Shown: one piece after another, positions 633-35,588 of the stretch
How the letters are laid out: each line of letters opens with the position of its first letter
How positions within the stretch are numbered: position 1 is the stretch's first letter
Assembly: GCA_053919585.1 (NCBI GenBank)
Contig: CM132823.1
Origin: Euprymna scolopes
Taxonomy: Eukaryota
Length of the DNA: 64,000 bases
Direction: 5' to 3' (one strand)
Position numbers and translations under genes: made by a program
Notes under the pieces: model-generated
What the model was told of the DNA's origin: nothing
The model's database searches: none
Seen by the model: only the letters and a program-made list of their open reading frames with translations

Positions 633-634
<2 letters not shown>
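1..634 (+). mobile_element. 3' part of a non-autonomous Helitron-like element with internal ~135-150 bp tandem repeats
   Basis: Four degenerate copies of ggtataataaaa.ttgtggggtctgcg... (tgggg at ~34, 187, 323, 456). Ends in an imperfect hairpin cagtc-aac-gacgg followed by CTAGT (630-634), directly abutting (TA)n. This is the typical Helitron 3' end layout. Confidence 0.6.

Positions 635-722
<88 letters not shown>
634..722. repeat. (TA)n(TG)n compound microsatellite
   Basis: Directly visible. Confidence 0.98.
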
Positions 723-724
<2 letters not shown>

Positions 725-830
725 GGTGGATTGATCGAAATCGAAATCGGAAATCGGAAAAATCCGAACTTTGGGGGTATCAGAATCGATATCGGAAAAA
801 TTCGTACCTAATTTCCGATTCCAAAAACGA
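723..830. mobile_element. Possible DNA-transposon terminus
   Basis: taggtggattgatcg followed by repeated aaatcg/aaatcgg motifs. Resembles the tagggtagatcgat terminus at 40608. No partner TIR found. Confidence 0.3.
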
Positions 831-1355
831 TTCTTTTTATATTTTTAGTCTTAATTTTCCATTGCTTATACTACTGATAACTTTTTATTGTTTTTAAACT
901 TTTAGTAAAACTAAACTTTGTAGATCATAATAACATCCAAATAAGATGTAATTCTTTTATTTGCAGAAAACAAACAAAACTTGAAAATTTATGAAAATTC
1001 AATAGGTAACCCCTAGAAGAATGCAGTTTATTTACGAGGTATCGAAAAAATTGTTTAAAATTAAAGAAATATTTTGTCAAGAAAAATGCTATCAAACATG
1101 ATTGCTAATTAAATCAAAAGTATAATATTAAAAACGTTTTTTAATCTTTAATTTATTTATTTAATGGGTTTATGCTTTTGTTAAGCTGAGTTTGGTCCGG
1201 TTTTTGTCTGCTCCCTCACTCCACATTGACAAATATAACAAGGAATGGACAAAAGGTACGAAAAAAACTTAGCTTTGTAGAAATTTGAAATTAATTTGAG
1301 AATTTTCATGCTTCGGTGTGAAAAACTTTTAGCATCAAACGTTCTTTGATTCTGC

Positions 1356-4300
1356 CATTTCCTCATACTTAGACTTAAGCATTCCTATATATCATTTCCT
1401 CATACTTAGACTTAAGCATTCCTATATATCATTTCCTCATACTTAGACTGAAGCATTCCTATATATCATTTCCTCATACTTAGACTGAAGAATTGCTATA
1501 TATCATTTCCTCATACTTAGACTTAAGCATTCCTATATATCATTTCCTCATACTTAGACTGAAGCATTCCTATATATCATTTCCTCATACTTAGACTGAA
1601 GCATTGCTATATATCATTTCCTCATACTTAGACTTAAGCATTCCTATATATCATTTCCTCATACTTAGACTGAAGCATTCCTATATATCATTTCCTCATA
1701 CTTAGACTGAAGCATTGCTATATATCATTTCCTCATACTTAGACTTAAGCATTCCTATATATCATTTCCTCATACTTAGACTGAAGCATTCCTATATATC
1801 ATTTCCTCATACTTAGACTTAAGCATTCCTATATATCATTTCCTCATACTTAGACTGAAGCATTCCTATATATCATTTCCTCATACTTAGACTTAAGCAT
1901 TCCTATATATCATTTCCTCATACTTAGACTTAAGCATTCCTATATATCATTTCCTCATACTTAGACTGAAGCATTCCTATATATCATTTCCTCATACTTA
2001 GACTTAAGCATTCCTATATATCATTTCCTCATACTTAGACTGAAGCATTCCTATATATCATTTCCTCATACTTAGACTTAAGCATTCCTATATATCATTT
2101 CCTCGTACTTAGACTGAAGCATTCCTATATATCATTTCCTCATACTTAGACTTAAGCATTCTTATATATCATTTCCTCATACTTAGACTGAAGCATTCCT
2201 ATATATCATTTCCTCATACTTAGACTTAAGCATTCCTATATATCATTTCCTCATACTTAGACTTAAGCATTCCTATATATCATTTCCTCATACTTAGACT
2301 TAAGCATTCCTATATATCATTTCCTCATACTTAGACTTAAGCATTCCTATATATCATTTCCTCATACTTAGACTTAAGCATTCCGATATATCATTTCCTC
2401 ATACTTAGACTTAAGCATTCCTCATACTTAGACTTAAGCATTCCTATATATCATTTCCTCATACTTAGACTTAAGCATTCTTATATATCATTTCCTCATA
2501 CTTAGACTTAAGCATTCCTATATATCATATCCTCATACTTAGACTTAAGCATTCCTATATATCATTTCCTCATACTTAGACTTAAGCATTCCTATATATC
2601 ATTTCCTCATACTTAGACTTAAGCATTCCTATATATCATTTCCTCATACTTAGACTTAAGCATTCCTATATATCATTTCCTCATACTTAAACTGAAGCAT
2701 TCCTATATATCATTTCCTCATACTTAGACTTAAGCATTCCTATATATCATTTCCTCGTACTTAGACTGAAGCATTCCTATATATCATTTCCTCATACTTA
2801 GACTTAAGCATTCCTATATATCATTTCCTCGTACTTAGACTGAAGCATTCCTATATATCATTTCCTCATACTTAGACTTAAGCATTCTTATATATCATTT
2901 CCTCATACTTAGACTGAAGCATTCCTATATATCATTTCCTCATACTTAGACTTAAGCATTCCTATATATCATTTCCTCATACTTAGACTTAAGCATTCCT
3001 ATATATCATTTCCTCATACTTAGACTTAAGCATTCCTATATATCATTTCCTCATACTTAGACTTAAGCATTCCTATATATCATTTCCTCATACTTAGACT
3101 TAAGCATTCCTATATATCATTTCCTCATACTTAGACTGAAGCATTCCTATATATAATTTCCTCATACTTAGACTGAAGCATTCCTATATATCATTTCCTC
3201 ATACTAAGACTTAAGCATTCCTATATATCATTTCCTCATACTTAGACTGAAGCATTCCTATATATCATTTCCTCATACTTAGACTTAAGCATTCCTATAT
3301 ATCATATCCTCATACTTAGACTTAAGCATTCCTATATATCATTTCCTCATACTTAGACTTAAGCATTCCTATATATCATTTCCTCATACTTAGACTGAAG
3401 CATTCCTATATATCATTTCCTCATACTTAGACTGAAGCATTGCTATATATCATTTCCTCATACTTAGACTTAAGCATTCCTATATATCATTTCCTCATAC
3501 TTAGACTTAAGCATTCCTATATATCATTTCCTCATACTTAGACTTAAGCATTCCTATATATCATTTCCTCATACTTAGACTGAAGCATTCCTATATATCA
3601 TTTCCTCATACTTAGACTTAAGCATTCCTATATATCATTTCCTCATACTTAGACTTAAGCATTCCTATATATCATTTCCTCATACTTAGACTGAAGCATT
3701 CCTATATATCATTTCCTCATACTTAGACTTAAGCATTCCTATATATCATTTCCTCGTACTTAGACTGAAGCATTCCTATATATCATTTCCTCATACTTAG
3801 ACTTAAGCATTCCTATATATCATTTCCTCGTACTTAGACTGAAGCATTCCTATATATCATTTCCTCATACTTAGACTTAAGCATTCTTATATATCATTTC
3901 CTCATACTTAGACTTAAGCATTCCTATATATCATTTCCTCATACTTAGACTTAAGCATTCCTATATATTATTTCCTCATACTTAGACTTAAGCATTCCTA
4001 TATATCATTTCCTCATACTTAGACTTAAGCATTCCTATATATCATTTCCTCATACTTAGACTTAAGAATTCCTATATATCATTTCCTCATACTAAGACTT
4101 AAGCATTCCTATATATCATTTCCTCATACTTAGACTGAAGCATTCCTATATATAATTTCCTCATACTTAGACTGAAGCATTCCTATATATCATTTCCTCA
4201 TACTTAGACTTAAGCATTCCTATATATCATTTCCTCATACTTAGACTGAAGCATTCCTATATATCATTTCCTCATACTTAGACTTAAGCATTCCTATATA

Positions 4301-7300
4301 TCATTTCCTCATACTTAGACTTAAGCATTCCTATATATCATTTCCTCATACTTAGACTTAAGCATTCCTATATATCATTTCCTCATACTTAGACTTAAGC
4401 ATTCCTATATATCATTTCTTCATACTTAGACTTAAGCATTCTTATATATCATTTCCTCATACATAGACTTAAGCATTCCTATATATCATTTCCTCATACT
4501 TAGACTTAAGCATTCCTATATATCATTTCCTCATACTTAGACTTAAGCATTCCTATATATCATTTCCTCATACTTAGACTTAAGCATTCCTATATATCAT
4601 TTCCTCATACTTAGACTTAAGCATTCCTATATATCATTTCTTCATACTTAGACTTAAGCATTCCTATATATCATTTCCTCATACTTAGGCTTAAGCATTC
4701 CTATATATCATTTCCTCATACTTAGACTGAAGCATTCCTATATATCATTTCCTCATACTTAGACTTAAGCATTCCTATATATCATTTCCTCATACTTAGA
4801 CTTAAGCATTCCTATATATCATTTCCTCATACTTAGACTTAAGCATTCCTATATATCATTTCCTCATACTTAGACTTAAGCATTCCTATATATCATTTCC
4901 TCATACTTAGACTTAAGCATTCCTATATATCATTTCCTCATACTTAGACTGAAGCATTCCTATATATAATTTCCTCATACTTAGACTGAAGCATTCCTAT
5001 ATATCATTTCCTCATACTTAGACTTAAGCATTCCTATATATCATTTCCTCATACTTAGACTGAAGCATTCCTATATATCATTTCCTCATACTTAGACTTA
5101 AGCATTCCTATATATCATTTCCTCATACTTAGACTTAAGCATTCCTATATATCATTTCCTCATACTTAGACTTAAGCATTCCTATATATCATTTCCTCAT
5201 ACTTAGACCTAAGCATTCCTATATATCATTTCCTCATACTTAGACTTAAGCATTCCTATATATCATTTCCTCATACTTAGACTTAAGCATTCCTATATAT
5301 CATTTCCTCATACTTAGACTTAAGCATTCCTATATATCATTTCCTCATACTTAGACTGAAGCATTCCTATATATCATTTCCTCATACTTAGACTTAAGCA
5401 TTCCTATATATCATTTCCTCATACTTAGACTTAAGCATTCCTATATATCATTTCCTCGTACTTAGACTGAAGCATTCCTATATATCATGTCCTCATACTT
5501 AGACTTAAGCATTCCTATATATCATTTCCTCGTACTTAGACTGAAGCATTCCTATATATCATTTCCTCATACTTAGACTTAAGCATTCTTATATATCATT
5601 TCCTCATACTTAGACTGAAGCATTCCTATATATCATTTCCTCATACTTAGACTTAAGCATTCCTATATATCATTTCCTCATACTTAGACTTAAGCATTCC
5701 TATATATCATTTCCTCATACTTAGACTTAAGCATTCCTATATATCATTTCCTCATACTTAGACTTAAGCATTCCTATATATCATTTCCTCATACTAAGAC
5801 TTAAGCATTCCTATATATCATTTCCTCATACTTAGACTGAAGCATTCCTATATATAATTTCCTCATACTTAGACTGAAGCATTCCTATATATCATTTCCT
5901 CATACTTAGACTTATGCATTCCTATATATCATTTCCTCATACTTAGACTGAAGCATTCCTATATATCATTTCCTCATACTTAGACTTAAGCATTCCTATA
6001 TATCATTTCCTCGTACTTAGACTGAAGCATTCCTATATATCATTTCCTCATACTTAGACTTAAGCATTCTTATATATCATTTCCTCATACTTAGACTTAA
6101 GCATTCCTATATATCATTTCCTCATACTTAGACTTAAGCATTCCTATATATCATTTCCTCATACTTAGACGTAAGCATTCCTATATATCATTTCCTCATA
6201 CTTAGACTTAAGCATTCCTATATATCATTTCCTCATACTTAGACTTAAGAATTCCTATATATCATTTCCTCATACTTAGACTTAAGCATTCCTATATATC
6301 ATTTCCTCATACTTAGACTGAAGCATTCCTATATATAATTTCCTCATACTTAGACTGAAGCATTCCTATATATCATTTCCTCATACTTAGACTTAAGCAT
6401 TCCTATATATCATTTCCTCATACTTAGACTTAAGCATTCCTATATATCATTTCCTCATACTTAGACTTAAGCATTCCTATATATCATTTCCTCATACTTA
6501 GACTTAAGCATTCCTATATATCATTTCCTCATACTTAGACTTAAGCATTCCTATATATCATTTCCTCATACTTAGACTTAAGCATTCCTATATATCATTT
6601 CTTCATACTTAGACTTAAGCATTCTTATATATCATTTCCTCATACTTAGACTTAAGCATTCCTATATATCATTTCCTCATACTTAGACTTAAGCATTCCT
6701 ATATATCATTTCCTCATACTTAGACTTAAGCATTCCTATATATCATTTCCTCATACTTAGACTTAAGCATTCCTATATATCATTTCCTCATACTTAGACT
6801 TAAGCATTCCTATATATCATTTCTTCATACTTAGACTTAAGCATTCCTATATATCATTTCCTCATACTTAGACTGAAGCATTCCTATATATCATTTCCTC
6901 ATACTTAGACTGAAGCATTCCTATATATCATTTCCTCATACTTAGACTTAAGCATTCCTATATATCATTTCCTCATACTTAGACTTAAGCATTCCTATAT
7001 ATCATTTCCTCATACTTAGACTTAAGCATTCCTATATATCATTTCCTCATACTTAGACTTAAGCATTCCTATATATCATTTCCTCATACTTAGACTTAAG
7101 CATTCCTATATATCATTTCCTCATACTTAGACCTAAGCATTCCTATATATCATTTCTTCATACTTAGACTTAAGCATTCTTATATATCATTTCCTCATAC
7201 TTAGACTTAAGCATTCCTATATATCATTTCCTCATACTTAGACTTAAGCATTCCTATATATCATTTCCTCATACTTAGACTTAAGCATTCCTATATATCA

Positions 7301-10300
7301 TTTCCTCATACTTAGACTTAAGCATTCCTATATATCATTTCCTCATACTTAGACTTAAGCATTCCTATATATCATTTCTTCATACTTAGACTTAAGCATT
7401 CCTATATATCATTTCCTCATACTTAGACTTAAGCATTCCTATATATCATTTCCTCATACTTAGACTTAAGCATTCCTATATATCATTTCCTCATACTTAG
7501 ACTTAAGCATTCCTATATATCATTTCCTCATACTTAGACTTAAGCATTCCTATATATCATTTCCTCATACTTAGACTTAAGCATTCCTATATATCATTTC
7601 CTCATACTTAGACTTAAGCATTCCTATATATCATATCCTCATACTTAGACTTAAGCATTCCTATATATCATTTCCTCATACTTAGACTTAAGCATTCCTA
7701 TATATCATTTCCTCATACTTAGACTTAAGCATTCCTATATATCATTTCCTCATACTTAGACTAAAGCATTCCTATATATCATTTCCTCATACTTAGACTT
7801 AAGCATTCCTATATATCATTTCCTCATACTTAGACTTAAGCATTCCTATATATCATTTCCTCATACTTAGACTTAAGCATTCCTATATATCATTTCCTCA
7901 TACTTAGACTTAAGCATTCCTATATATCATTTCCTCATAATTAGACTTAAGCATTCCTATATATCATTTCCTCATACTTAGACTTAAGCATTCCTATATA
8001 TCATTTCCTCATACTTAGACTTAAGCATTCCTATATATCATTTCCTCATACTTAGACTTAAGCATTCCTATATATCATTTCCCATACTTAGACTTAAGCA
8101 TTCCTATATATCATTTCTTCATACTTAGACTTAAGCATTCCTATATATCATTTCCTCATACTTAGACTTAAGCATTCCTATATATCATTTCCTCATACTT
8201 AGACTTAAGCATTCCTATATATCATTTCCTCATACTTAGACTTAAGCATTCCTATATATCATTTCCTCATACTTAGACTTAAGCATTCCTATATATAATT
8301 TCCTCATACTTAGACTTAAGCATTCCTATATATCATTTCTTCATACTTAGACTTAAGCATTCTTATATATCATTTCCTCATACTTAGACTTAAGCATTCC
8401 TATATATCATATCCTCATACTTAGACTTAAGCATTCCTATATATCATTTCCTCATACTTAGACTTAAGCATTCCTATATATCATTTCCTCATACTTAGAC
8501 TTAAGCATTCCTATATATCATTTCCTCATACTTAGACTAAAGCATTCCTATATATCATTTCCTCATACTTAGACTTAAGCATTCCTATATATCATTTCCT
8601 CATACTTAGACTTAAGCATTCCTATATATCATTTCCTCATACTTAGACTTAAGCATTCCTATATATCATTTCCTCATACTTAGACTTAAGCATTCCTATA
8701 TATCATTTCCTCATAATTAGACTTAAGCATTCCTATATATCATTTCCTCATACTTAGACTTAAGCATTCCTATATATCATTTCCTCATACTTAGACTTAA
8801 GCATTCCTATATATCATTTCCTCATACTTAGACTTAAGCATTCCTATATATCATTTCCTCATACTTAGACTTAAGCATTTCTATATATCATTTCCTCATA
8901 CTTAGACTGAAGCATTCCTATATATCATTTCCTCATACTTAGACTTAAGCATTCCTATATATCATTTCCTCGTACTTAGACTTAAGCATTCCTATATATC
9001 ATTTCCTCATACTTAGACTGAAGCATTCCTATATATCATTTCTTCATACTTAGACTTAAGCATTCCTATATATCATTTCTTCATACTTAGACTTAAGCAT
9101 TCCTATATATCATTTCCTCATACTTAGACTGAAGCATTCCTATATATCATTTCCTCATACTTAGACTTAAGCATTCCTATATATCATTCCCTCATACTTA
9201 GACTGAAGCATTCCTATATATCATTTCCTCATACTTAGACTTAAGCATTCCTATATATCATTTCCTCATACTTAGACTTAAGCATTCCTATATATCATTT
9301 CCTCATACTTAGACTGAAGCATTCCTATATATCATTTCCTCATACTTAGACTTAAGCATTCCTATATATCATTTCCTCGTACTTAGACTGAAGCATTCCT
9401 ATATATCATTTCCTCATACTTAGACTTAAGCATTCCTATATATCATTTCCTCGTACTTAGACTGAAGCATTCCTATATATCATTTCCTCATACTTAGACT
9501 TAAGCATTCTTATATATCATTTCCTCATACTTAGACTTAAGCATTCCTATATATCATTTCCTCATACTTAGACTTAAGCATTCCTATATATCATTTCCTC
9601 ATACTTAGACTTAAGCATTCCTATATATCATTTCCTCATACTTAGACTTAAGCATTCCTATATATCATTTCCTCATACTTAGACTTAAGAATTCCTATAT
9701 ATCATTTCCTCATACTTAGACTTAAGCATTCCTATATATCATTTCCTCATACTTAGACTGAAGCATTCCTATATATAATTTCCTCATACTTAGACTGAAG
9801 CATTCCTATATATCATTTCCTCATACTTAGACTTAAGCATTCCTATATATCATTTCCTCATACTTAGACTGAAGCATTCCTATATATCATTTCCTCATAC
9901 TTAGACTTAAGCATTCCTATATATCATTTCCTCATACTTAGACTTAAGCATTCCTATATATCATTTCCTCATACTTAGACTTAAGCATTCCTATATATCA
10001 TTTCCTCATACTTAGACGTAAGCATTCCTATATATCATTTCTTCATACTTAGACTTAAGCATTCTTATATATCATTTCCTCATACTTAGACTTAAGCATT
10101 CCTATATATCATTTCCTCATACTTAGACTTAAGCATTCCTATATATCATTTCCTCATACTTAGACTTAAGCATTCCTATATATCATTTCCTCATACTTAG
10201 ACTTAAGCATTCCTATATATCATTTCCTCATACTTAGACTGAAGCATTCCTATATATAATTTCCTCATACTTAGACTGAAGCATTCCTATATATCATTTC

Positions 10301-13300
10301 CTCATACTTAGACTTAAGCATTCCTATATATCATTTTCTCATACTTAGACTGAAGCATTCCTATATATCATTTCCTCATACTTAGACTTAAGCATTCCTA
10401 TATATCATTTCCTCATACTTAGACCTAAGCATTCCTATATATCATTTCTTCATACTTAGACTTAAGCATTCTTATATATCATTTCCTCATACTTAGACTT
10501 AAGCATTCCTATATATCATTTCCTCATACTTAGACTTAAGCATTCCTATATATCATTTCCTCATACTTAGACTTAAGCATTCCTATATATCATTTCTTCA
10601 TACTTAGACTTAAGCATTCTTATATATCATTTCCTCATACTTAGACTTAAGCATTCCTATATATCATATCCTCATACTTAGACTTAAGCATTACTATATA
10701 TCATTTCCTCATACTTAGACTTAAGCATTCCTATATATCATTTCCTCATACTTAGACTTAAGCATTCCTATATATCATTTCCTCGTACTTAGACTTAAGC
10801 ATTCCTATATATCATTTCCTCATACTTAGACTGAAGCATTCCTATATATCATTTCTTCATACTTAGACTTAAGCATTCCTATATATCATTTCTTCATACT
10901 TAGACTTAAGCATTCCTATATATCATTTCCTCATACTTAGACTGAAGCATTCCTATATATCATTTCCTCATACTTAGACTTAAGCATTCCTATATATCAT
11001 TCCCTCATACTTAGACTGAAGCATTCCTATATATCATTTCCTCATACTTAGACTTAAGCATTCCTATATATCATTTCCTCATACTTAGACTTAAGCATTC
11101 CTATATATCATTTCCTCATACTTAGACTGAAGCATTCCTATATATCATTTCCTCATACTTAGACTTAAGCATTCCTATATATCATTTCCTCGTACTTAGA
11201 CTGAAGCATTCCTATATATCATTTCCTCATACTTAGACTTAAGCATTCCTATATATCATTTCCTCGTACTTAGACTGAAGCATTCCTATATATCATTTCC
11301 TCATACTTAGACTTAAGCATTCTTATATATCATTTCCTCATACTTAGACTTAAGCATTCCTATATATCATTTCCTCATACTTAGACTTAAGCATTCCTAT
11401 ATATCATTTCCTCATACTTAGACTTAAGCATTCCTATATATCATTTCCTCATACTTAGACTTAAGCATTCCTATATATCATTTCCTCATACTTAGACTTA
11501 AGAATTCCTATATATCATTTCCTCATACTTAGACTTAAGCATTCCTATATATCATTTCCTCATACTTAGACTGAAGCATTCCTATATATAATTTCCTCAT
11601 ACTTAGACTGAAGCATTCCTATATATCATTTCCTCATACTTAGACTTAAGCATTCCTATATATCATTTCCTCATACTTAGACTGAAGCATTCCTATATAT
11701 CATTTCCTCATACTTAGACTTAAGCATTCCTATATATCATTTCCTCATACTTAGACTTAAGCATTCCTATATATCATTTCCTCATACTTAGACTTAAGCA
11801 TTCCTATATATCATTTCCTCATACTTAGACTTAAGCATTCCTATATATCATTTCTTCATACTTAGACTTAAGCATTCTTATATATCATTTCCTCATACTT
11901 AGACTTAAGCATTCCTATATATCATTTCCTCATACTTAGACTTAAGCATTCCTATATATCATTTCCTCATACTTAGACTTAAGCATTCCTATATATCATT
12001 TCCTCATACTTAGACTTAAGCATTCCTATATATCATTTCCTCATACTTAGACTGAAGCATTCCTATATATAATTTCCTCATACTTAGACTGAAGCATTCC
12101 TATATATCATTTCCTCATACTTAGACTTAAGCATTCCTATATATCATTTCCTCATACTTAGACTGAAGCATTCCTATATATCATTTCCTCATACTTAGAC
12201 TTAAGCATTCCTATATATCATTTCCTCATACTTAGACATAAGCATTCCTATATATCATTTCCTCATACTTAGACTTAAGCATTCCTATATATCATTTCCT
12301 CATACTTAGACCTAAGCATTCCTATATATCATTTCTTCATACTTAGACTTAAGCATTCTTATATATCATTTCCTCATACTTAGACTTAAGCATTCCTATA
12401 TATCATTTCCTCATACTTAGACTTAAGCATTCCTATATATCATTTCCTCATACTTAGACTTAAGCATTCCTATATATCATTTCCTCATACTTAGACTTAA
12501 GCATTCCTATATATCATTTCCTCATACTTAGACTTAAGCATTCCTATATATCATTTCTTCATACTTAGACTTAAGCATTCCTATATATCATTTCCTCATA
12601 CTTAGACTTAAGCATTCCTATATATCATTTCCTCATACTTAGACTTAAGCATTCCTATATATCATTTCCTCATACTTAGACTTAAGCATTCCTATATATC
12701 ATTTCCTCATACTTAGACTTAAGCATTCCTATATATCATTTCCTCATACTTAGACTTAAGCATTCCTATATATCATTTCTTCATACTTAGACTTAAGCAT
12801 TCTTATATATCATTTCCTCATACTTAGACTTAAGCATTCCTATATATCATATCCTCATACTTAGACTTAAGCATTCCTATATATCATTTCCTCATACTTA
12901 GACTTAAGCATTCCTATATATCATTTCCTCATACTTAGACTTAAGCATTCCTATATATCATTTCCTCATACTTAGACTAAAGCATTCCTATATATCATTT
13001 CCTCATACTTAGACTTAAGCATTCCTATATATCATTTCCTCATACTTAGACTTAAGCATTCCTATATATCATTTCCTCATACTTAGACTTAAGCATTCCT
13101 ATATATCATTTCCTCATACTTAGACTTAAGCATTCCTATATATCATTTCCTCATAATTAGACTTAAGCATTCCTATATATCATTTCCTCATACTTAGACT
13201 TAAGCATTCCTATATATCATTTCCTCATACTTAGACTTAAGCATTCCTATATATCATTTCCTCATACTTAGACTTAAGCATTCCTATATATCATTTCCTC

Positions 13301-16300
13301 ATACTTAGACTTAAGCATTTCTATATATCATTTCCTCATACTTAGACTGAAGCATTCCTATATATCATTTCCTCATACTTAGACTTAAGCATTCCTATAT
13401 ATCATTTCCTCGTACTTAGACTTAAGCATTCCTATATATCATTTCCTCATACTTAGACTGAAGCATTCCTATATATCATTTCTTCATACTTAGACTTAAG
13501 CATTCCTATATATCATTTCTTCATACTTAGACTTAAGCATTCCTATATATCATTTCCTCATACTTAGACTGAAGCATTCCTATATATCATTTCCTCATAC
13601 TTAGACTTAAGCATTCCTATATATCATTCCCTCATACTTAGACTGAAGCATTCCTATATATCATTTCCTCATACTTAGACTTAAGCATTCCTATATATCA
13701 TTTCCTCATACTTAGACTTAAGCATTCCTATATATCATTTCCTCATACTTAGACTGAAGCATTCCTATATATCATTTCCTCATACTTAGACTTAAGCATT
13801 CCTATACATCATTTCCTCGTACTTAGACTGAAGCATTCCTATATATCATTTCCTCATACTTAGACTTAAGCATTCCTATATATCATTTCCTCGTACTTAG
13901 ACTGAAGCATTCCTATATATCATTTCCTCATACTTAGACTTAAGCATTCTTATATATCATTTCCTCATACTTAGACTTAAGCATTCCTATATATCATTTC
14001 CTCATACTTAGACTTAAGCATTCCTATATATCATTTCCTCATACTTAGACTTAAGCATTCCTATATATCATTTCCTCATACTTAGACTTAAGCATTCCTA
14101 TATATCATTTCCTCATACTTAGACTTAAGAATTCCTATATATCATTTCCTCATACTTAGACTTAAGCATTCCTATATATCATTTCCTCATACTTAGACTG
14201 AAGCATTCCTATATATAATTTCCTCATACTTAGACTGAAGCATTCCTATATATCATTTCCTCATACTTAGACTTAAGCATTCCTATATATCATTTCCTCA
14301 TACTTAGACTGAAGCATTCCTATATATCATTTCCTCATACTTAGACTTAAGCATTCCTATATATCATTTCCTCATACTTAGACTTAAGCATTCCTATATA
14401 TCATTTCCTCATACTTAGACTTAAGCATTCCTATATATCATTTCCTCATACTTAGACTTAAGCATTCCTATATATCATTTCTTCATACTTAGACTTAAGC
14501 ATTCTTATATATCATTTCCTCATACTTAGACTTAAGCATTCCTATATATCATTTCCTCATACTTAGACTTAAGCATTCCTATATATCATTTCCTCATACT
14601 TAGACTTAAGCATTCCTATATATCATTTCCTCATACTTAGACTTAAGCATTCCTATATATCATTTCCTCATACTTAGACTTAAGCATTCCTATATATCAT
14701 TTCTTCATACTTAGACTTAAGCATTCCTATATATCATTTCCTCATACTTAGACTTAAGCATTCCTATATATCATTTCCTCATACTTAGACTGAAGCATTC
14801 CAATATATCATTTCCTCATACTTAGACTTAAGCATTCCTATATATCATTTCCTCATACTTAGACTTAAGCATTCCTATATATCATTTCCTCATACTTAGA
14901 CTTAAGCATTCCTATATATCATTTCCTCATACTTAGACTTAAGCATTCCTATATATCATTTCCTCATACTTAGACTTAAGCATTCCTATATATCATTTCC
15001 TCATACTTAGACTGAAGCATTCCTATATATAATTTCCTCATACTTAGACTGAAGCATTCCTATATATCATTTCCTCATACTTAGACTTAAGCATTCCTAT
15101 ATATCATTTCCTCATACTTAGACTGAAGCATTCCTATATATCATTTCCTCATACTTAGACTTAAGCATTCCTATATATCATTTCCTCATACTTCGACTTA
15201 AGCATTCCTATATATCATTTCCTCATACTTAGACTTAAGCATTCCTATATATCATTTCCTCATACTTAGACCTAAGCATTCCTATATATCATTTCTTCAT
15301 ACTTAGACTTAAGCATTCTTATATATCATTTCCTCATACTTAGACTTAAGCATTCCTATATTTCATTTCCTCATACTTAGACTTAAGCATTCCTATATAT
15401 CATTTCCTCATACTTAGACTTAAGCATTCCTATATATCATTTCCTCATACTTAGACTTAAGCATTCCTATATATCATTTCCTCATACTTAGACTGAAGCA
15501 TTCCTATATATCATTTCCTCATACTTAGACTGAAGCATTCCTATATATCATTTCCTCATACTTAGACTGAAGCATTCCTATATATCATTTCCTCATACTT
15601 AGACTTAAGCATTCCTATATATCATTTCCTCATACTTAGACTTAAGCATTCCTATATATCATTTCCTCATACTTAGACTTAAGCATTCCTATATATCATT
15701 TCCTCATACTTAGACCTAAGCATTCCTATATATCATTTCTTCATACTTAGACTTAAGCATTCTTATATATCATTTCCTCATACTTAGACTTAAGCATTCC
15801 TATATATCATTTCCTCATACTTAGACTTAAGCATTCCTATATATCATTTCCTCATACTTAGACTTAAGCATTCCTATATATCATTTCCTCATACTTAGAC
15901 TTAAGCATTCCTATATATCATTTCCTCATACTTAGACTTAAGCATTCCTATATATCATTTCTTCATACTTAGACTTAAGCATTCCTATATATCATTTCCT
16001 CATACTTAGACTTAAGCATTCCTATATATCATTTCCTCATACTTAGACTTAAGCATTCCTATATATCATTTCCTCATACTTAGACTTAAGCATTCCTATA
16101 TATCATTTCCTCATACTTAGACTTAAGCATTCCTATATATCATTTCCTCATACTTAGACTTAAGCATTCCTATATATCATTTCTTCATACTTAGACTTAA
16201 GCATTCTTATATATCATTTCCTCATACTTAGACTTAAGCATTCCTATATATCATATCCTCATACTTAGACTTAAGCATTCCTATATATCATTTCCTCATA

Positions 16301-19300
16301 CTTAGACTTAAGCATTCCTATATATCATTTCCTCATACTTAGACTTAAGCATTCCTATATATCATTTCCTCATACTTAGACTAAAGCATTCCTATATATC
16401 ATTTCCTCATACTTAGACTTAAGCATTCCTATATATCATTTCCTCATACTTAGACTTAAGCATTCCTATATATCATTTCCTCATACTTAGACTTAAGCAT
16501 TCCTATATATCATTTCCTCATACTTAGACTTAAGCATTCCTATATATCATTTCCTCATAATTAGACTTAAGCATTCCTATATATCATTTCCTCATACTTA
16601 GACTTAAGCATTCCTATATATCATTTCCTCATACTTAGACTTAAGCATTCCTATATATCATTTCCTCATACTTAGACTTAAGCATTCCTATATATCATTT
16701 CCTCATACTTAGACTTAAGCATTTCTATATATCATTTCCTCATACTTAGACTGAAGCATTCCTATATATCATTTCCTCATACTTAGACTTAAGCATTCCT
16801 ATATATCATTTCCTCGTACTTAGACTTAAGCATTCCTATATATCATTTCCTCATACTTAGACTGAAGCATTCCTATATATCATTTCTTCATACTTAGACT
16901 TAAGCATTCCTATATATCATTTCTTCATACTTAGACTTAAGCATTCCTATATATCATTTCCTCATACTTAGACTGAAGCATTCCTATATATCATTTCCTC
17001 ATACTTAGACTTAAGCATTCCTATATATCATTCCCTCATACTTAGACTGAAGCATTCCTATATATCATTTCCTCATACTTAGACTTAAGCATTCCTATAT
17101 ATCATTTCCTCATACTTAGACTTAAGCATTCCTATATATCATTTCCTCATACTTAGACTGAAGCATTCCTATATATCATTTCCTCATACTTAGACTTAAG
17201 CATTCCTATATATCATTTCCTCGTACTTAGACTGAAGCATTCCTATATATCATTTCCTCATACTTAGACTTAAGCATTCCTATATATCATTTCCTCGTAC
17301 TTAGACTGAAGCATTCCTATATATCATTTCCTCATACTTAGACTTAAGCATTCTTATATATCATTTCCTCATACTTAGACTTAAGCATTCCTATATATCA
17401 TTTCCTCATACTTAGACTTAAGCATTCCTATATATCATTTCCTCATACTTAGACTTAAGCATTCCTATATATCATTTCCTCATACTTAGACTTAAGCATT
17501 CCTATATATCATTTCCTCATACTTAGACTTAAGAATTCCTATATATCATTTCCTCATACTTAGACTTAAGCATTCCTATATATCATTTCCTCATACTTAG
17601 ACTGAAGCATTCCTATATATAATTTCCTCATACTTAGACTGAAGCATTCCTATATATCATTTCCTCATACTTAGACTTAAGCATTCCTATATATCATTTC
17701 CTCATACTTAGACTGAAGCATTCCTATATATCATTTCCTCATACTTAGACTTAAGCATTCCTATATATCATTTCCTCATACTTAGACTTAAGCATTCCTA
17801 TATATCATTTCCTCATACTTAGACTTAAGCATTCCTATATATCATTTCCTCATACTTAGACTTAAGCATTCCTATATATCATTTCTTCATACTTAGACTT
17901 AAGCATTCTTATATATCATTTCCTCATACTTAGACTTAAGCATTCCTATATATCATTTCCTCATACTTAGACTTAAGCATTCCTATATATCATTTCCTCA
18001 TACTTAGACTTAAGCATTCCTATATATCATTTCCTCATACTTAGACTTAAGCATTCCTATATATCATTTCCTCATACTTAGACTTAAGCATTCCTATATA
18101 TCATTTCTTCATACTTAGACTTAAGCATTCCTATATATCATTTCCTCATACTTAGACTTAAGCATTCCTATATATCATTTCCTCATACTTAGACTGAAGC
18201 ATTCCTATATATCATTTCCTCATACTTAGACTTAAGCATTCCTATATATCATTTCCTCATACTTAGACTTAAGCATTCCTATATATCATTTCCTCATACT
18301 TAGACTTAAGCATTCCTATATATCATTTCCTCATACTTAGACTTAAGCATTCCTATATATCATTTCCTCATACTTAGACTTAAGCATTCCTATATATCAT
18401 TTCCTCATACTTAGACTGAAGCATTCCTATATATAATTTCCTCATACTTAGACTGAAGCATTCCTATATATCATTTCCTCATACTTAGACTTAAGCATTC
18501 CTATATATCATTTCCTCATACTTAGACTGAAGCATTCCTATATATCATTTCCTCATACTTAGACTTAAGCATTCCTATATATCATTTCCTCATACTTCGA
18601 CTTAAGCATTCCTATATATCATTTCCTCATACTTAGACTTAAGCATTCCTATATATCATTTCCTCATACTTAGACCTAAGCATTCCTATATATCATTTCT
18701 TCATACTTAGACTTAAGCATTCTTATATATCATTTCCTCATACTTAGACTTAAGCATTCCTATATATCATTTCCTCATACTTAGACTTAAGCATTCCTAT
18801 ATATCATTTCCTCATACTTAGACTTAAGCATTCCTATATATCATTTCCTCATACTTAGACTTAAGCATTCCTATATATCATTTCCTCATACTTAGACTTA
18901 AGCATTCCTATATATCATTTCTTCATACTTAGACTTAAGCATTCCTATATATCATTTCCTCATACTTAGACTTAAGCATTCCTATATATCATTTCCTCAT
19001 ACTTAGACTTAAGCATTCCTATATATCATTTCCTCATACTTAGACTTAAGCATTCCTATATATCATTTCCTCATACTTAGACTTAAGCATTCCTATATAT
19101 CATTTCCTCATACTTAGACTTAAGCATTCCTATATATCATTTCTTCATACTTAGACTTAAGCATTCTTATATATCATTTCCTCATACTTAGACTTAAGCA
19201 TTCCTATATATCATATCCTCATACTTAGACTTAAGCATTCCTATATATCATTTCCTCATACTTAGACTTAAGCATTCCTATATATCATTTCCTCATACTT

Positions 19301-22300
19301 AGACTTAAGCATTCCTATATATCATTTCCTCATACTTAGACTAAAGCATTCCTATATATCATTTCCTCATACTTAGACTTAAGCATTCCTATATATCATT
19401 TCCTCATACTTAGACTTAAGCATTCCTATATATCATTTCCTCATACTTAGACTTAAGCATTCCTATATATCATTTCCTCATACTTAGACTTAAGCATTCC
19501 TATATATCATTTCCTCATAATTAGACTTAAGCATTCCTATATATCATTTCCTCATACTTAGACTTAAGCATTCCTATATATCATTTCCTCATACTTAGAC
19601 TTAAGCATTCCTATATATCATTTCCTCATACTTAGACTTAAGCATTCCTATATATCATTTCCTCATACTTAGACTTAAGCATTTCTATATATCATTTCCT
19701 CATACTTAGACTGAAGCATTCCTATATATCATTTCCTCATACTTAGACTTAAGCATTCCTGTATATCATTTCCTCATACTTAGACTTAAGCATTCCTATA
19801 TATCATTTCCTCATACTTAGACTTAAGCATTCCTATATATCATTTCCTCATACTTAGACTTAAGCATTCCTATATATCATTTCCTCATACTTAGACTTAA
19901 GCATTCCTATATATCATTTCCTCATACTTAGACTTAAGCATTCCTATATATCATTTCCTCATACTTAGACTTAAGCAGTCCTATATATCATTTCCTCATA
20001 CTTAGACTTAAGCATTTCTATATATCATTTCCTCATACTTAGACTGAAGCATTCCTATATATTATTTCCTCATACTTAGACTTAAGCATTCCTATATATC
20101 ATTTCCTCATACTTAGACTTAAGCATTTCTATATATCATTTCCTCATACTTAGACTGAAGCATTCCTATATATCATTTCCTCATACTTAGACTTAAGCAT
20201 TCCTATATATCATTTCCTCATACTTAGACTTAAGCATTCCTATATATCATTTCCTCATACTTAGACTGAAGCATTCCTATATATCATTTTCTCATACTTA
20301 GACTTAAGCATTCCTATATATCATTTCCTCATACTTAGACTTAAGCATTCCTATATATCATTTCCTCATACTTAGACTTAAGCATTCCTATATATCATTT
20401 CCTCATACTTAGACTTAAGCATTCCTATATATCATTTCCTCATACTTAGACTGAAGCATTCCTATATATCATTTCCTCATACTTAGACTGAAGCATTCCT
20501 ATATATCATTTCTTCATACTTAGACTTAAGCATTCCTATATATCATTTCCTCATACTTAGACTTAAGCATTCCTATATATCATTTCCTCATACTTAGACT
20601 TAAGCATTCCTATATATCATTTCCTCATACTTAGACTTAAGCATTCCTATATATCATTTCCTCATACTTAGACTTAAGCATTCCTATATATCATTTCCTC
20701 ATACTTAGACTTAAGCATTCCTATATATCATTTCCTCATACTTAAACTTAAGCATTCCTATATATCATTTCCTCATACTTAGACTTAAGCATTCCTATAT
20801 ATCATTTCCTCATACTTAGACTTAAGCAGTCCTATATATCATTTCCTCATACTTAGACTTAAGCATTTCTATATATCATTTCCTCATACTTAGACTGAAG
20901 CATTCCTATATATTATTTCCTCATACTTAGACTTAAGCATTCCTATATATCATTTCCTCGTACTTAGACTTAAGCATTCCTATATATCATTTCCTCGTAC
21001 TTAGACTTAAGCATTCCTATATATCATTTCCTCATACTTAGACTTAAGCATTCCTATATATCATTTCCTCATACTTAGACTTAAGCATTCCTATATATCA
21101 TTTCCTCATACTTAGACTTAAGCATTCCTATATATCATTTCCTCATACTTAGACTTAAGCATTCCTATATATCATTTCCTCATACTTAGACTTAAGCATT
21201 CCTATATATCATTTCCTCATAATTAGACTTAAGCATTCCTATATATCATTTCCTCATACTTAGACTTAAGCATTCCTATATATCATTTCCTCATACTTAG
21301 ACTTAAGCATTCCTATATATCATTTCCTCATACTTAGACTTAAGCATTCCTATATATCATTTCCTCATACTTAGACTTAAGCATTTCTATATATCATTTC
21401 CTCATACTTAGACTGAAGCATTCCTATATATCATTTCCTCATACTTAGACTTAAGCATTCCTGTATATCATTTCCTCATACTTAGACTTAAGCATTCCTA
21501 TATATCATTTCCTCATACTTAGACTTAAGCATTCCTATATATCATTTCCTCATACTTAGACTTAAGCATTCCTATATATCATTTCCTCATACTTAGACTT
21601 AAGCATTCCTATATATCATTTCCTCATACTTAGACTTAAGCATTCCTATATATCATTTCCTCATACTTAGACTTAAGCAGTCCTATATATCATTTCCTCA
21701 TACTTAGACTTAAGCATTTCTATATATCATTTCCTCATACTTAGACTGAAGCATTCCTATATATTATTTCCTCATACTTAGACTTAAGCATTCCTATATA
21801 TCATTTCCTCATACTTAGACTTAAGCATTTCTATATATCATTTCCTCATACTTAGACTGAAGCATTCCTATATATCATTTCCTCATACTTAGACTTAAGC
21901 ATTCCTATATATCATTTCCTCATACTTAGACTTAAGCATTCCTATATATCATTTCCTCATACTTAGACTGAAGCATTCCTATATATCATTTTCTCATACT
22001 TAGACTTAAGCATTCCTATATATCATTTCCTCATACTTAGACTTAAGCATTCCTATATATCATTTCCTCATACTTAGACTTAAGCATTCCTATATATCAT
22101 TTCCTCATACTTAGACTTAAGCATTCCTATATATCATTTCCTCATACTTAGACTGAAGCATTCCTATATATCATTTCCTCATACTTAGACTGAAGCATTC
22201 CTATATATCATTTCTTCATACTTAGACTTAAGCATTCCTATATATCATTTCCTCATACTTAGACTTAAGCATTCCTATATATCATTTCCTCATACTTAGA

Positions 22301-22906
22301 CTTAAGCATTCCTATATATCATTTCCTCATACTTAGACTTAAGCATTCCTATATATCATTTCCTCATACTTAGACTTAAGCATTCCTATATATCATTTCC
22401 TCATACTTAGACTTAAGCATTCCTATATATCATTTCCTCATACTTAAACTTAAGCATTCCTATATATCATTTCCTCATACTTAGACTTAAGCATTCCTAT
22501 ATATCATTTCCTCATACTTAGACTTAAGCAGTCCTATATATCATTTCCTCATACTTAGACTTAAGCATTTCTATATATCATTTCCTCATACTTAGACTGA
22601 AGCATTCCTATATATTATTTCCTCATACTTAGACTTAAGCATTCCTATATATCATTTCCTCGTACTTAGACTTAAGCATTCCTATATATCATTTCCTCGT
22701 ACTTAGACTTAAGCATTCCTATATATCATTTCCTCATACTTAGACTTAAGCATTCCTATATATCATTTCCTCATACTTAGACTTAAGCATTCCTATATAT
22801 CATTTCCTCATACTTAGACTTAAGCATTCCTATATATCATTTCCTCATACTTAGACTTAAGCATTCCTATATATCATTTCCTCACACTTAGACTGAAGCA
22901 TTCCTA
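1356..22906. repeat. 37-bp tandem satellite, ~582 copies, consensus catttcctcatacttagact(t/g)aagcattcctatatat
   Basis: Period 37 (1356, 1393, ...). Highly homogeneous, no spacers, stop codons in all frames. One shortened monomer near 2393-2420 and a 1-bp deletion near 8081. Confidence 0.99.
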
Positions 22907-23184
22907 CGGCACTAGATACCGTCTGAAGCCGATCAATCTCACTTCTCATCTATCAAACGTTGAGTTGGAAGGCAATAAAAGCATGACTGCTAAAAGTATT
23001 TTTGGTAACATGATACCGTTTGGCTTTGACAATTTAGTTTCACATTTCCCATTAACTGACACTACGCACGAAAGACTATGAAAATTTACCAGTGTAAAAA
23101 TGTAAGTGTATTAAAAAAACTATTTTAAAAATATTCAAAATGTGTTTCATGATTTGAAAATTAATTTGGCGGAATTGTACAACC

Positions 23185-24540
23185 GGTGCCCGGAAAACTC
23201 GTCCCGGGAAAACTTGTCTCCGGAAAACCCGTACCCGGAAAACTCGTACCCGGAAAACTCGTACCCAAAAAAACTCCCCCTTTTTTACTAGGTAGGAAAA
23301 CTGGTCCCTTATTGAATAAATATCGATTGAAAACACATTTTATTACCGTTCTTGAAGGAGATATTGTTTTTAAAAGAGACTATGCACCCCCATAATATTT
23401 TTAAAAAAAAATATTTTTAACTCTTGCTTAAAAAAAAACTTGATCACGGAGTCAAGATACGAAAAACGAAACTAAATATTTATTAAAAAAAAAATACTCT
23501 AGTTTTAACATTTTTGTGCCATTACGAAACAAAAATAAATAAAGAAAACACGTATTATCAAAGAAAGCAATCATTTTATTTAGAAGAATTAATTCAGTTT
23601 AAATAATTCTTGTGCTATTACAAAACAAAAAAGAAAAAACGGTATTATGTAATTTTGGTATCGCGCTGAAATAATAACGTTATTATTTCGAAAGCCATTC
23701 TTAACATCGGGAGGGGAGGGTATCGTTTAAAAGTCATTTCGGGGGCACTTGTGCAGTACTTAAAAATATTTATTTTCTTTTGGAGGTGGGGGAGGCTCGT
23801 TTTAAAACTATATCTACCTCAGTATTTTCTTTAATTTTCGGATATTTTTTGTAAAAAATAATTTACTAACTAATGTCGAGTCTGACATTACTTGTTATTT
23901 CTTTTTAATTAAATAAACTCTTTAAAATAAGTTTAAACACCAAAAACTTACAAAGCTAGGTAGAAAACGAAAAATCAATTTAATTTTTTTAAAACAATAA
24001 ACATGTAAAAATATTTTTTTTTAAATATTATGGGATGTGCATTATTACCTAAAAATATACAAATTTATTTTCTTTCGGAGAGGGGGGGGCTCGTTTAAAA
24101 ACTATATCTACCTTAATATTTTCTTTAATTTTCTATTTTTGAGCGATTATCCTCCTAAGACGTGATCCTCTTATGTCGGACATTTTTTTATTCACAAGTA
24201 ACACTCGACATTACTTTTTTTTTTAACTAAATAAACTCTTTAAAATAAGTTGAAAGGCCAAAAACTTTCAAAACTAGGTAGAAAACTAAAAGTTAGAAAA
24301 ATTAATTTAATTTTTTTAAAACCACAGTAAAAAAGTAAAAATATTTAAAAAAAAAAAAATATTATTGGATGGGTATTCTCTTTTAAAGACAATATCTTCT
24401 TCAAGAACGGTCATAAGATGTGTTTTCAATCGATATTTATTCAATAAGGGATCAGTTTTCCTACCGAGCAAAAGGGAACGAGTTTCCCGGGTACGAGTTT
24501 TCCGGAGACGAGTTTTCCGGGGACGAGTTTTCCTAAATTC
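23185..24540. mobile_element. Non-autonomous TIR element (MITE/foldback type) with ~230-bp TIRs
   Basis: Left TIR 23185-~23420 is the reverse complement of ~24330-24540. Both carry 15-bp subterminal repeats ccggaaaactcgtac. Perfect 8-bp TSD gtacaacc at 23177-23184 and 24541-24548. Internal duplication ~23760-24010 vs ~24060-24340. Confidence 0.9.
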
Positions 24541-26759
24541 GTACAACCATCACCACATGTGTAATTTCTATACTGATACATTTTTGAAATTTTTTTACTG
24601 GATTATTATTGATTGGACAGCAATTAACCAGATTATGAAAAAAAAAATCATTATTTTGACATTTTAAAGGGGTGCTCATTTTTTAGTTACAACATTCTGG
24701 TAAATGTGTCACCCATTTTTTTTTTCTTCGGGAGATATGAAATGGTGCCATGTTGACGAAGCAATGTATTGGTAGGCGTATGATATGAAAATTGACAACG
24801 GGATGGAAAATTATGAAACATTTCTCCAGCATCTTAGTGAAATTTATAATATTTAAAAAATATCTGGGAGGGGTGTCTACTTTTTAAGTGATTACGCATG
24901 GTTTTACGGTGTGGTCAATCGAACTTAAGTTAGTGGTAAACAATATAGTTAACATCCAGAAAAAATTAGAATAACAAAGAACTGATGATTATTTTACGTT
25001 AAATTTATATTCGAAGCTGATTTCCTACTCTAAATACTAAAATGATTGCTTTTCTATCCGTCAAGTTTTTTAAGGTTTCATCCGTAATCATTAGGCACTA
25101 CCATTTTTATGTGAACTTTTCCAAAAATGTACACATGATCTGGTGACGTCATCGAACGATTTTTTAAAAACTATTATTTACTACTGTAATTTAATTTAAT
25201 AGGAATTTATTTTACATTCAAATAATTTACTTAAAGATTAAATTATCGAAGTGTAAAAAAAGATTCATTATCGTTAGAAATAATTAAGTAAAATCTGTTT
25301 TTTCAAACATAACACAAAAATAAAATGTTACGTAACTTTTTTGACATCTACAAAGGAGCAAAAGTGACAATAAAACAGTTTGTTAGTTCACTACACATGT
25401 TATTTGTTTATTTAAGTTTTCCATACTTTGGAATGATTTAAATTATTTATACGAAAGACCATTTTTCCCGCCATGAATGCTACTTGTGAATAATTTTCCC
25501 TTTTACCAGTTTGGTGCTTCCGACCACTTCATTACTACTAGAATTAAAAACAAACGTTAACGAAGAAGTTTTTTAAAGTATCTAAAATTGAAAAAAAAGT
25601 TTAATAAACTTTAAAATTAAACGTAAAACACAAGAAATAATTTATAAAAATAGTTTAACAACTTACTTTTAATAGATAATTTGGTTACCTTTTAATAAAC
25701 CCTAACAGAATAATCGAGTTAAGCTGTGAAGCTTTACAACGGCGAATGCAACGGCGGAAGTAAATGTCTTCAATCAATCAGTTAATTTTTGGTCAGTCTA
25801 TGCTTCCGTATTTTATTTCATAAAATAAGACATACAAGAATATCGCAGTGCATGTACAAAAACTGGATTTTCACACAATATTAATTTTGAATCGGTTTTA
25901 ATCTGCCATAAAATATCTGGCAAGAGTCATGTTTATATTATAACTTTATAGTTTAAAAAAATTTCACACAATTAATTAAGAAATCTATGTTCTAGCGGAC
26001 ATTTTGAAAAATGGAATTTTAATCGTTTTAATCTTTTAAAAATCAGTTAATTTTTAAGAAGTTACTTTTTCATGGCAATTCAACTGATTATAGTATATAT
26101 TAATTAGAAAAAAACGATATTTTTAAAAAACATAATAGTATTAAGTTTATATCAATTTTTTAATTGCAACTTCAAGATAATGTTTTGTTCAATACATGTA
26201 TTTAAACTTTAAAAAATAAATATTTTTTCTTATTTGAACTCATAATAAATAGAAATTTCAATAGATTTAAATATATTTTGTTCGAATTTCGAAAAAAATA
26301 AATAGGGAGGGGGGACACGCACTAAAAATATTTCTCCTCATATATTTTACAGACACTGCATTTTATATGTAATTTCACTCTAAAATGGATAAGTATCGAA
26401 AATTTGACTATTAGTTGATTTTTGCTAGATTTATTAAATACGGGTATGTTTTCACGTTCGGAATGTCTACTACATGGGGGCGTTATTTTAAAGCGTCAAT
26501 TATGTAAACAAGATTTTCGCCTCGCAATTTCATTATTTTCGTTCGATGACAAAAATCTTAAAAAATTATTACTAGTTTATTTTGCCCTTCTTTTAAATGG
26601 TACAAAAGTTATGTTGATAATATTAGTTTATAAGAAAGTTACATCGTTTTACATATAGGAGTGGGGTAATTCTGTGTTGACTTTTGGCAGTCCCTAGCAA
26701 TCATCTATAAAAGTAATATTTCATTTTGGAGTAGGGATTTAGTTGAGAATGTTAATTTG

Positions 26760-35177: not shown

Positions 35178-35588
35178 TTTTTGGTAGTCGACAGAGAATG
35201 CTAACCTTTTTGGTAGTGGATAAAGAATGCTAACTTTTTTGGTAGTGGACAGAGAATGCAAACTTTTTTGGTAGTGGACAGAGAATGCTAACTTTTTTGG
35301 TAGTGGACAAAGAATGCTAACTTTTTTGGTAGTCGACAGAGAATGCTAACTTTTTTGGTAGTGGACAAAGAATGCTAACTTTTTTGGTAGTCGACAGAGA
35401 ATGCTAACTTTTTTGGTAGTGGACAAAGAATGCTATCTTTTTTGGTAGTGGACAGAGAATGCAAACTTTTTTGGTAGTGGACAGAGAATGCTAACTTTTT
35501 TGGTAGTGGACAAAGAATGCTAACTTTTTTGGTAGTCGACAGAGAATGCTAACTTTTTTGGTAGTGGACAAAGAATGCTAACTTTTTT
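35178..35588. repeat. 29-bp minisatellite, ~14 copies (ttttttggtagtggacaaagaatgctaac)
   Basis: Period 29 (ggtag at 35183, 35212, ...), with partly alternating gtcgacaga/gtggacaaa variants. Confidence 0.97.

What the first reader, a model, noticed from the sequence alone, without database searches (positions are those of the whole stretch)
1335..22952. 21.5 kb satellite appears to have grown in place from a 32-bp seed; the flanks rejoin into a reading frame
Seen: the array starts and ends on the same 32 bp (catttcctcatacttagact.aagcattccta). The extra tatat occurs only between copies, and both edges are sharp. Collapsing the array to one seed gives, on the minus strand, tttgatag|ATG then MRSEIDRLQTVSSAVGMLQSKYEEMAESKNV* (22949 to 1335). 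With the array present the frame ends ...QSKCEEMIYRNA*. Inference: a duplication with a short TA filler inside a terminal exon or TE ORF amplified ~580-fold. If the locus is transcribed, this changes the C-terminus and creates a 21 kb repeat 3' UTR. The frame is only 31 codons, so chance is not excluded.
Basis: partly seen in the sequence, partly recalled or inferred. Interest (0 to 1): 0.75.

Follow-up and report, generated by a model that had tools for sequence, protein, structure and literature searches.

The report
Tandem array born inside dead transposon
A 37-base piece of an old, broken hAT jumping-gene copy was copied about 583 times where it sat, making a 21.5-kb tandem array found nowhere else in this 5.9-Gb genome. 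This origin of repeats is already known, and the small reading frame across the array is a chance one.

Summary
Window 1356-22906 is 583 head-to-tail 37-bp units, 1.4% diverged, with sharp edges. The unit occurs nowhere else in the 5.9-Gb assembly.

"Grown in place" is supported. Both flanks belong to one decayed copy of a dispersed repeat with hundreds of copies. In about 30 paralogous copies the two flanks are contiguous, with one copy of the unit between them. Long paralogues carry hAT transposase relics, so the parent is a hAT DNA transposon. The array sits in its non-coding left subterminal region.

Two parts of the interpretation fail:
- **The seed.** It was 37 bp of transposon, not 32 bp plus filler. 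The "TATAT" is the family's own TGTAT/TATAT at that position. The left edge later lost 6 bp.
- **The 31-codon frame.** It is chance. Paralogues stop after 12-18 codons, and the frame exists here only through a 1-bp loss. It lies on the strand opposite the transposase gene. Frames this long occur about 4 per kb nearby. One polyA RNA run gave no reads.

The array grew by nested multi-kb block duplications, some with zero mismatches. It was not seen in DNA runs of two other species.

This scan has already reported the same kind of origin twice in this genome (s1-288488, s1-295690). It is a clean new member of a known kind, of low to moderate interest.

The parts
634..722 (.). (TA)27 and (TG)17 microsatellites at the left terminus of the transposon copy. 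The TG run appears to have grown out of the terminal TAGTGT.
   Evidence: Seven of the 13 paralogous copies listed (L014 is the same place as L002) have a TA run directly outside the same terminus.
716..1355 (+). Left flank: the left-terminal, non-coding subterminal part of a decayed hAT-family copy. The terminus resembles TAGTGTTGGGACGATTAATCGG and is followed by AATCGG-type repeats.
   Evidence: Window 1000-1355 has 905 first-look candidates in the genome; the 39 scored paralogues are 80-86% identical. Homology to paralogues starts at 719-779. The terminus is sharp in the 13 paralogous copies listed. This flank is 9.9% from the family majority; the paralogue median is 9.0%.
1356..22906 (+). 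Locus-specific tandem array of 583 units of 37 bp (21,551 bp), derived from one 37-bp segment of the same transposon copy.
1350..1361 (+). Left edge of the array. It reads TCTGCC|ATTTCC and lacks the 6 nt (TGTATC-type block) that paralogues have here and that every inner junction of the array keeps as TATATC.
   Evidence: Sixteen of 36 paralogues have TGTATC, and most others have one-step variants. The window alone has nothing there.
2392..2414 (+). The single 23-nt unit (14-nt deletion). A single 36-nt unit lies at 8039-8074.
8386..22906 (+). Zone of recent block duplications. Most 740-bp windows here have a twin with 0-2 mismatches, at lags that include 46, 49, 92, 120 and 212 units.
22907..23166 (+). 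Right flank: the continuation of the same hAT copy, cut off at 23166. Paralogues run on for kilobases to the transposase region.
22857..22949 (-). It is a chance frame in transposon debris.
23167..24545 (.). Another repeat with long inverted arms that carry 15-bp tandem repeats (23189-23266 and 24474-24533). It abuts the truncated hAT copy and is not part of the array.

Best explanation
One old copy of a hAT DNA transposon, of which only the left 0.9 kb remains here, had a 37-bp stretch of its non-coding subterminal region duplicated in tandem. The stretch lies about 630 bp inside the left terminus.

Shown:
- The founder unit already carried this copy's own six substitutions.
- The array then grew to 583 units.
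- Much of the recent growth came from duplication of blocks of dozens to hundreds of units.
- The two flanks stayed as they were, except for a 6-bp loss at the left edge.

Inferred:
- The mechanism was unequal sister-chromatid or homologue exchange, or replication slippage or template switching.
- The array is non-coding and has no known function.
- The short minus-strand frame is an accident of decay.
For: - **Array and its uniqueness:**
- **Flanks are a dispersed repeat:** there are 905 and 435 first-look candidates for the two flanks, and the best paralogues are 84-86% identical.
- **Contiguous paralogues:** the collapsed sequence aligns in one piece through the unit in L002, L007, L012, L016, L017, L031 and others.
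- **The unit is transposon sequence:** 31 of 37 positions match the family majority without gaps.
- **The parent is hAT:** two paralogues on different chromosomes are collinear over more than 6.6 kb. They carry a hAT dimerisation domain at 40.3 bits against a cut-off of 21.4. They also give weak zf-BED and hAT RNase-H matches.
- **Termini:** the left terminus is sharp in the 13 paralogous copies listed, and a matching inverted end was seen once.
- **Block growth:** twins with zero mismatches at lags of 46 to 212 units.
- **Young relative to the insertion:** 1.4% divergence inside the array against 9.9% flank-to-family.
- **Reads:** a DNA run of the same species covers the array and the junction region. 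DNA runs of two other species give zero depth on 22700-22967.
Against: - No true empty allele or orthologous empty site was seen, only paralogues at 80-86% identity.
- The 6-bp gap at the left edge needs one extra event.
- The array's length rests on a single assembly, and read depth from contigs is not a copy number.
- Absence in the two other species rests on contigs of runs of 3.3-4.6 Gb, which can show presence but not absence.
- Eight-base target duplications for the hAT assignment could not be shown cleanly, because the targets are TA-rich.
Confidence: 0.9

Rival explanations
1. One reading: this copy had only the 32-bp seed, and the first duplication joined two seeds through an untemplated TATAT filler.
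For: Collapsing the array to one unit gives 32 nt between the flanks, not 37, and the left edge has no TATAT.
Against: A random 5-nt filler would match the family's own 5-mer at the homologous position, with at most 1 mismatch, about 1.6% of the time (16 of 1024; my arithmetic). Three paralogues read TATAT there (two TATATC, one TATATG), and at least 30 of 36 carry the block.
Confidence: 0.06
2. The frame is a real terminal exon or transposon ORF, and the expansion changed its C-terminus and created a repeat 3' UTR.
For: An ATG follows an AG, and there are 31 open codons in the collapsed state. Runs X1 and X2, which the tool only guessed to be RNA, hold about a third of the sampled words of 22700-23300.
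Against: - Paralogues stop after 12-18 codons.
- Two stops lie directly upstream in frame.
- Chance frames of this length occur 3-4 per kb.
- The peptide's only matches in the genome are its own two pieces at the array edges.
- It lies antisense to the transposase, in a non-coding subterminal region.
- A polyA run with 1.8 Gb read gave 0 reads on 22700-23034.
Confidence: 0.02
3. The array was made elsewhere, or as circular DNA by rolling-circle copying, and then inserted into the transposon copy.
For: The units are very uniform, and one edge is imperfect.
Against: The unit is exactly the transposon segment expected between these two flanks, and the right edge is seamless. No other locus holds the unit. 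The nested block structure fits stepwise growth.
Confidence: 0.03
4. The array is real, but its assembled length and block pattern are partly an assembly artefact.
For: Perfect multi-kb internal duplicates are hard to assemble. Only one assembly was available.
Against: An independent-looking DNA run shows much higher summed word depth on the array (497) than on the junction region (5-8). The tool warns that this is not a copy number.
Confidence: 0.15

Closest known systems
Satellite or tandem-repeat DNA born from part of a transposable element (reviewed in PMC9659126, Cells 2022)
   Same: A short internal segment of a transposon is amplified head to tail. The review states that satDNA may form by tandem amplification of a whole TE or only a part of it, and that any part can serve.
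   Different: This array is at a single locus and has not spread. Both parental flanks are still readable, so the founding event can be reconstructed almost base by base.
The other in-place arrays noted by this scan in the same genome (s1-288488: 24 bp x 189 from Gypsy integrase codons, same window; s1-295690: 84 bp x about 550 in a dead transposon)
   Same: Each is a locus-specific array amplified from a piece of a dead transposon. These are AI notes and I did not re-test them.
   Different: Here the parent is a hAT DNA transposon and the piece is non-coding subterminal sequence.
Subterminal regions of hAT elements such as Ac/Ds
   Same: Short terminal inverted repeats are followed by many copies of a short motif. 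Here the motif is AATCGG-type. Ac has AAACGG (my own knowledge of Ac, not tested here).
   Different: The amplified 37 bp lies inside these motifs, about 630 bp from the terminus, and does not contain them.

Membership tests
TE-derived tandem repeat (satellite born from part of a TE) | Head-to-tail array of near-identical monomers | tested here: met
   583 units at 1.4% divergence.
TE-derived tandem repeat (satellite born from part of a TE) | The monomer is homologous to a segment of a dispersed transposon family | tested here: met
   31 of 37 positions match the majority of 36 paralogues, without gaps.
TE-derived tandem repeat (satellite born from part of a TE) | The flanks continue the same transposon on both sides (in-place origin) | tested here: met
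Classical satellite DNA (genome-wide family) | Many arrays or loci, usually in heterochromatin and shared among chromosomes | tested here: not met
   All 576 and 582 pattern matches lie in this one array. It sits at 36.08 Mb of a 76.2-Mb contig.
hAT superfamily (parent transposon) | Transposase with a hAT C-terminal dimerisation domain (plus BED finger and RNase-H-like core) | tested here: met
   PF05699 scores 40.3 bits against a cut-off of 21.4 in paralogue L059, and 20.0 bits in L061. The zf-BED and hAT RNase-H matches are below their cut-offs. The genes are broken by stops. The window's own copy holds none of this.
hAT superfamily (parent transposon) | Short terminal inverted repeats | tested here: inconclusive
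   The left end TAGTGTTGGGACG is seen in the 13 paralogous copies listed. One right end reads CGTCCCATCACTA. Only one right end was seen.
hAT superfamily (parent transposon) | 8-bp target-site duplication | tested here: inconclusive
   In one element the two sides read ATATATAT and ATATATTA. The sequence is low in complexity, so this is not decisive.
Protein-coding exon | The frame is kept in homologues and is longer than chance | tested here: not met
Protein-coding exon | Transcript evidence | tested here: not met
   One polyA run gave 0 reads on 22700-23034. This is one sample only, with 12% of the run read.

The most novel reading that the evidence does not exclude
This genome may have an unusually active process that amplifies short pieces of dead transposons in place into arrays of 5-50 kb. 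Three cases have now been noted, two of them in this one 64-kb window. Such a process could be a lineage-specific source of new satellites and of genome growth.
Probability: 0.12. Interest if true: 0.5.

Novelty: new member of a known kind. Interest (0 to 1): 0.25.

Why it matters
It is a very clean snapshot of how a tandem array is born. The parent transposon family, the founder segment, both intact junctions and the block-wise growth can all be read from sequence.

It also corrects two tempting readings. The "filler" is ancestral transposon sequence. The "rejoined reading frame" is a chance frame in a decayed non-coding region.

Beyond that it is ordinary. Origin of satellites from transposons is well documented, and nothing here points to a function.

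Tried and rejected
- **Retroposon reading.** I first read the (TA)n(TG)n at 634-722 as a retroposon tail and the repeat as a SINE or LINE. I rejected this once long paralogues showed hAT transposase relics on the other strand and a sharp TIR-like terminus.
- **Walking out the 'subfamily B' copies** (L051, L052) led into a mosaic of other repeats, including a 373-bp element with 8086 candidates, and gave no long ORF.
- **Independent tandem duplications of the same segment in other copies.** A consensus-type junction pattern gave 70 hits against 9 for the control. The eight hits inspected belong to an unrelated repeat, so no second array was found.
- **BLAST-type search of the genome with three units** was not scored because there were too many candidates. 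I replaced it with pattern counts.
- **Microhomology at 37-bp spacing** in the family sequence: I looked by eye and saw none.
- **Continuation of the hAT copy beyond the repeat at 23167-24545:** the copy does not resume there.

Full report
**1. The observation**

Tandem Repeats Finder reports a 37-bp period from 1356 to 22906 at 96-97% matches. Parsing the array in register gives 583 units:
- 580 units of 37 nt;
- one unit of 23 nt at 2392;
- one unit of 36 nt at 8039;
- a final unit of 32 nt at 22875-22906.

There are 40 unit variants. 336 units are identical to the consensus. Mean divergence is 1.4% and does not rise towards either edge.

**2. The array is unique to this locus**

The window is C41:36,084,001-36,148,000 of a 5.9-Gb assembly with 925 contigs. 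C41 is 76.2 Mb long.

| Pattern | Mismatches allowed | Matches in genome | Matches in window |
|---|---|---|---|
| Junction 33-mer | up to 1 | 576 | 576 |
| Core 31-mer | up to 3 | 582 | 582 |

There are no matches on the reverse strand and none for the reversed control patterns.

**3. The flanks**

- Window 1000-1355 has 905 first-look candidates in the genome. The 39 scored paralogues are 80-86% identical.
- Window 22907-23180 has 435 candidates.

On several chromosomes the two flanks lie side by side, 32-40 bp apart. A query made of 150 bp of left flank, one unit and 150 bp of right flank aligns in one piece through the unit in L002, L007, L012, L016, L017, L031 and others. The alignment of 36 paralogues shows one copy of the unit between the same flanks. 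It is seen in paralogues, not in an allele or an orthologue.

**4. The seed was 37 bp of transposon**

Between TCTGCC and ACGGCG the paralogues read a TGTATC-type block followed by a 30-nt core.
- 16 of 36 have TGTATC, three have TGTATT and two have TATATC. Most of the rest are one-step variants.
- The window's left edge is the only one with nothing there.

Written in the phase TATAT+32, the array unit aligns without gaps to the family majority at 31 of 37 positions. That includes 4 of the 5 TATAT positions. A random 5-nt filler would do this about 1.6% of the time (my arithmetic).

So the founder duplication copied 37 bp of the element. The inner junctions keep the ancestral block with one G-to-A change. 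The left edge lost 6 nt later. The right edge is seamless.

**5. What the parent repeat is**

Paralogues continue to the right beyond the point where the window's copy stops (23166). Two long copies on C10 and C17 are collinear over more than 6.6 kb. On the strand that corresponds to the window's + strand they carry broken transposase pieces:
- a hAT C-terminal dimerisation domain at 40.3 bits against a cut-off of 21.4, and 20.0 bits in the second copy;
- sub-threshold zf-BED and hAT RNase-H matches.

The left terminus TAGTGTTGGGACGATTAATCGG is sharp in the 13 paralogous copies listed, each with a different outside flank. It is followed by AATCGG-type repeats. One right end reads the inverse, CGTCCCATCACTA. 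An 8-bp target duplication could not be shown cleanly.

The parent is therefore a hAT DNA transposon. The window holds only its left ~0.9 kb, which is non-coding. The amplified piece lies about 630 bp inside the terminus. The copy does not resume elsewhere in the window.

**6. Timing and mode of growth**

- The left flank is 9.9% from the family majority. The paralogue median is 9.0%. The copy is therefore old.
- All units share six differences from the family, so the founder already carried them.
- Units differ from each other by only 1.4%.

A symbol map of the unit variants shows long motifs of variants recurring. Most 740-bp windows between about 8.4 kb and 22.9 kb have a twin with 0-2 mismatches. 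The lags include 46, 49, 92, 120 and 212 units. Much of the present length thus comes from recent duplications of 1.7-7.8-kb blocks. The mechanism, unequal exchange or replication template switching, is inferred and not shown.

**7. The reading frame**

- In paralogues the homologous frame stops after 12-18 codons. The window's longer frame comes from a 1-bp loss (CCGATCAA where the family has CCCGATCAA).
- Two stops lie directly upstream in frame.
- ATG-to-stop frames of 31 codons or more occur 4.3 per kb in the neighbouring sequence and 3.1 per kb in shuffles.
- The peptide finds only its own two pieces in the whole genome.
- It lies antisense to the transposase orientation, in non-coding subterminal sequence.

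**8. Reads (laid on 22700-24700 at 90% likeness)**

| Run | Type | Result on the array and junction |
|---|---|---|
| X23 | polyA RNA, 1.8 Gb read | 0 reads on 22700-23034, both strands |
| X3 | DNA, same species | summed word depth 497 on the array, falling to 5-8 over the junction and flank |
| X9, X10 | DNA, two other species | 0 depth on 22700-22967; cover only the repeat further right |

The limits are real. This is one RNA sample. Contigs show presence but not absence. X3 may come from the assembled individual.

**9. Comparison with what is known**

Tandem amplification of a whole TE or of only part of one is a documented route to satellite DNA, and any part may serve (PMC9659126). Two earlier notes of this scan describe the same kind of birth in this genome, one of them in this same window. 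I did not re-test those notes.

This case is a new member of that kind. It differs in being confined to one locus, so it is not a classical genome-wide satellite, and in having both parental junctions legible.

**10. Verdict**

- "Grown in place" is supported.
- "32-bp seed plus filler" and "exon or TE ORF" are not supported.
- No function is indicated.
- Interest is low to moderate.

Noticed in passing
window 23167-24545: A repeat of about 1.4 kb with long inverted arms. Each arm carries a 15-bp tandem repeat (CCCGGAAAACTCGTA and its complement). It abuts the truncated hAT copy. A member of the same family sits about 95 bp further along the hAT sequence in paralogue L015.
   Followed up: partly
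window 29536-32616 (-): An uninterrupted 1026-aa ORF that looks like a non-LTR retrotransposon ORF2 (endonuclease plus reverse transcriptase). Near-identical fragments occur in L051, L052 and L059. I did not run it against Pfam.
   Followed up: no
window 634-722 and left ends of L003, L006, L008, L009, L015, L016, L017: Seven of the 13 paralogous copies listed have a (TA)n run directly outside the left terminus. In the window a (TG)n run seems to have grown from the terminal TAGTGT. This could reflect a target preference for TA runs, or microsatellite birth at target duplications.
   Followed up: partly
window 35178-35588, 48114-49067 and 57002-61527: Three more mid-size tandem arrays lie in the same 64 kb: 29 bp x 14, 47 bp x 20 and 24 bp x 189. 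The last was already traced to Gypsy integrase codons by another agent. I did not examine the other two.
   Followed up: no
window 43745-44083 (-): A 112-aa ORF with a mariner-type transposase C-terminal look (…HDNARPH…). It is probably a fragment of a Tc1/mariner element.
   Followed up: no
L051:6941-7313 (C14): A 373-bp repeat with 8086 first-look candidates in the genome, at 85-88% identity. It is a very abundant short element of unknown class.
   Followed up: no
window 23638-23771 and 24107-24173: polyA RNA reads pile up here, at depths of 100-500, but at 90-99% likeness and mostly running on into unlike sequence. They are likely transcripts of paralogous repeat copies, not of this locus.
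   Followed up: no
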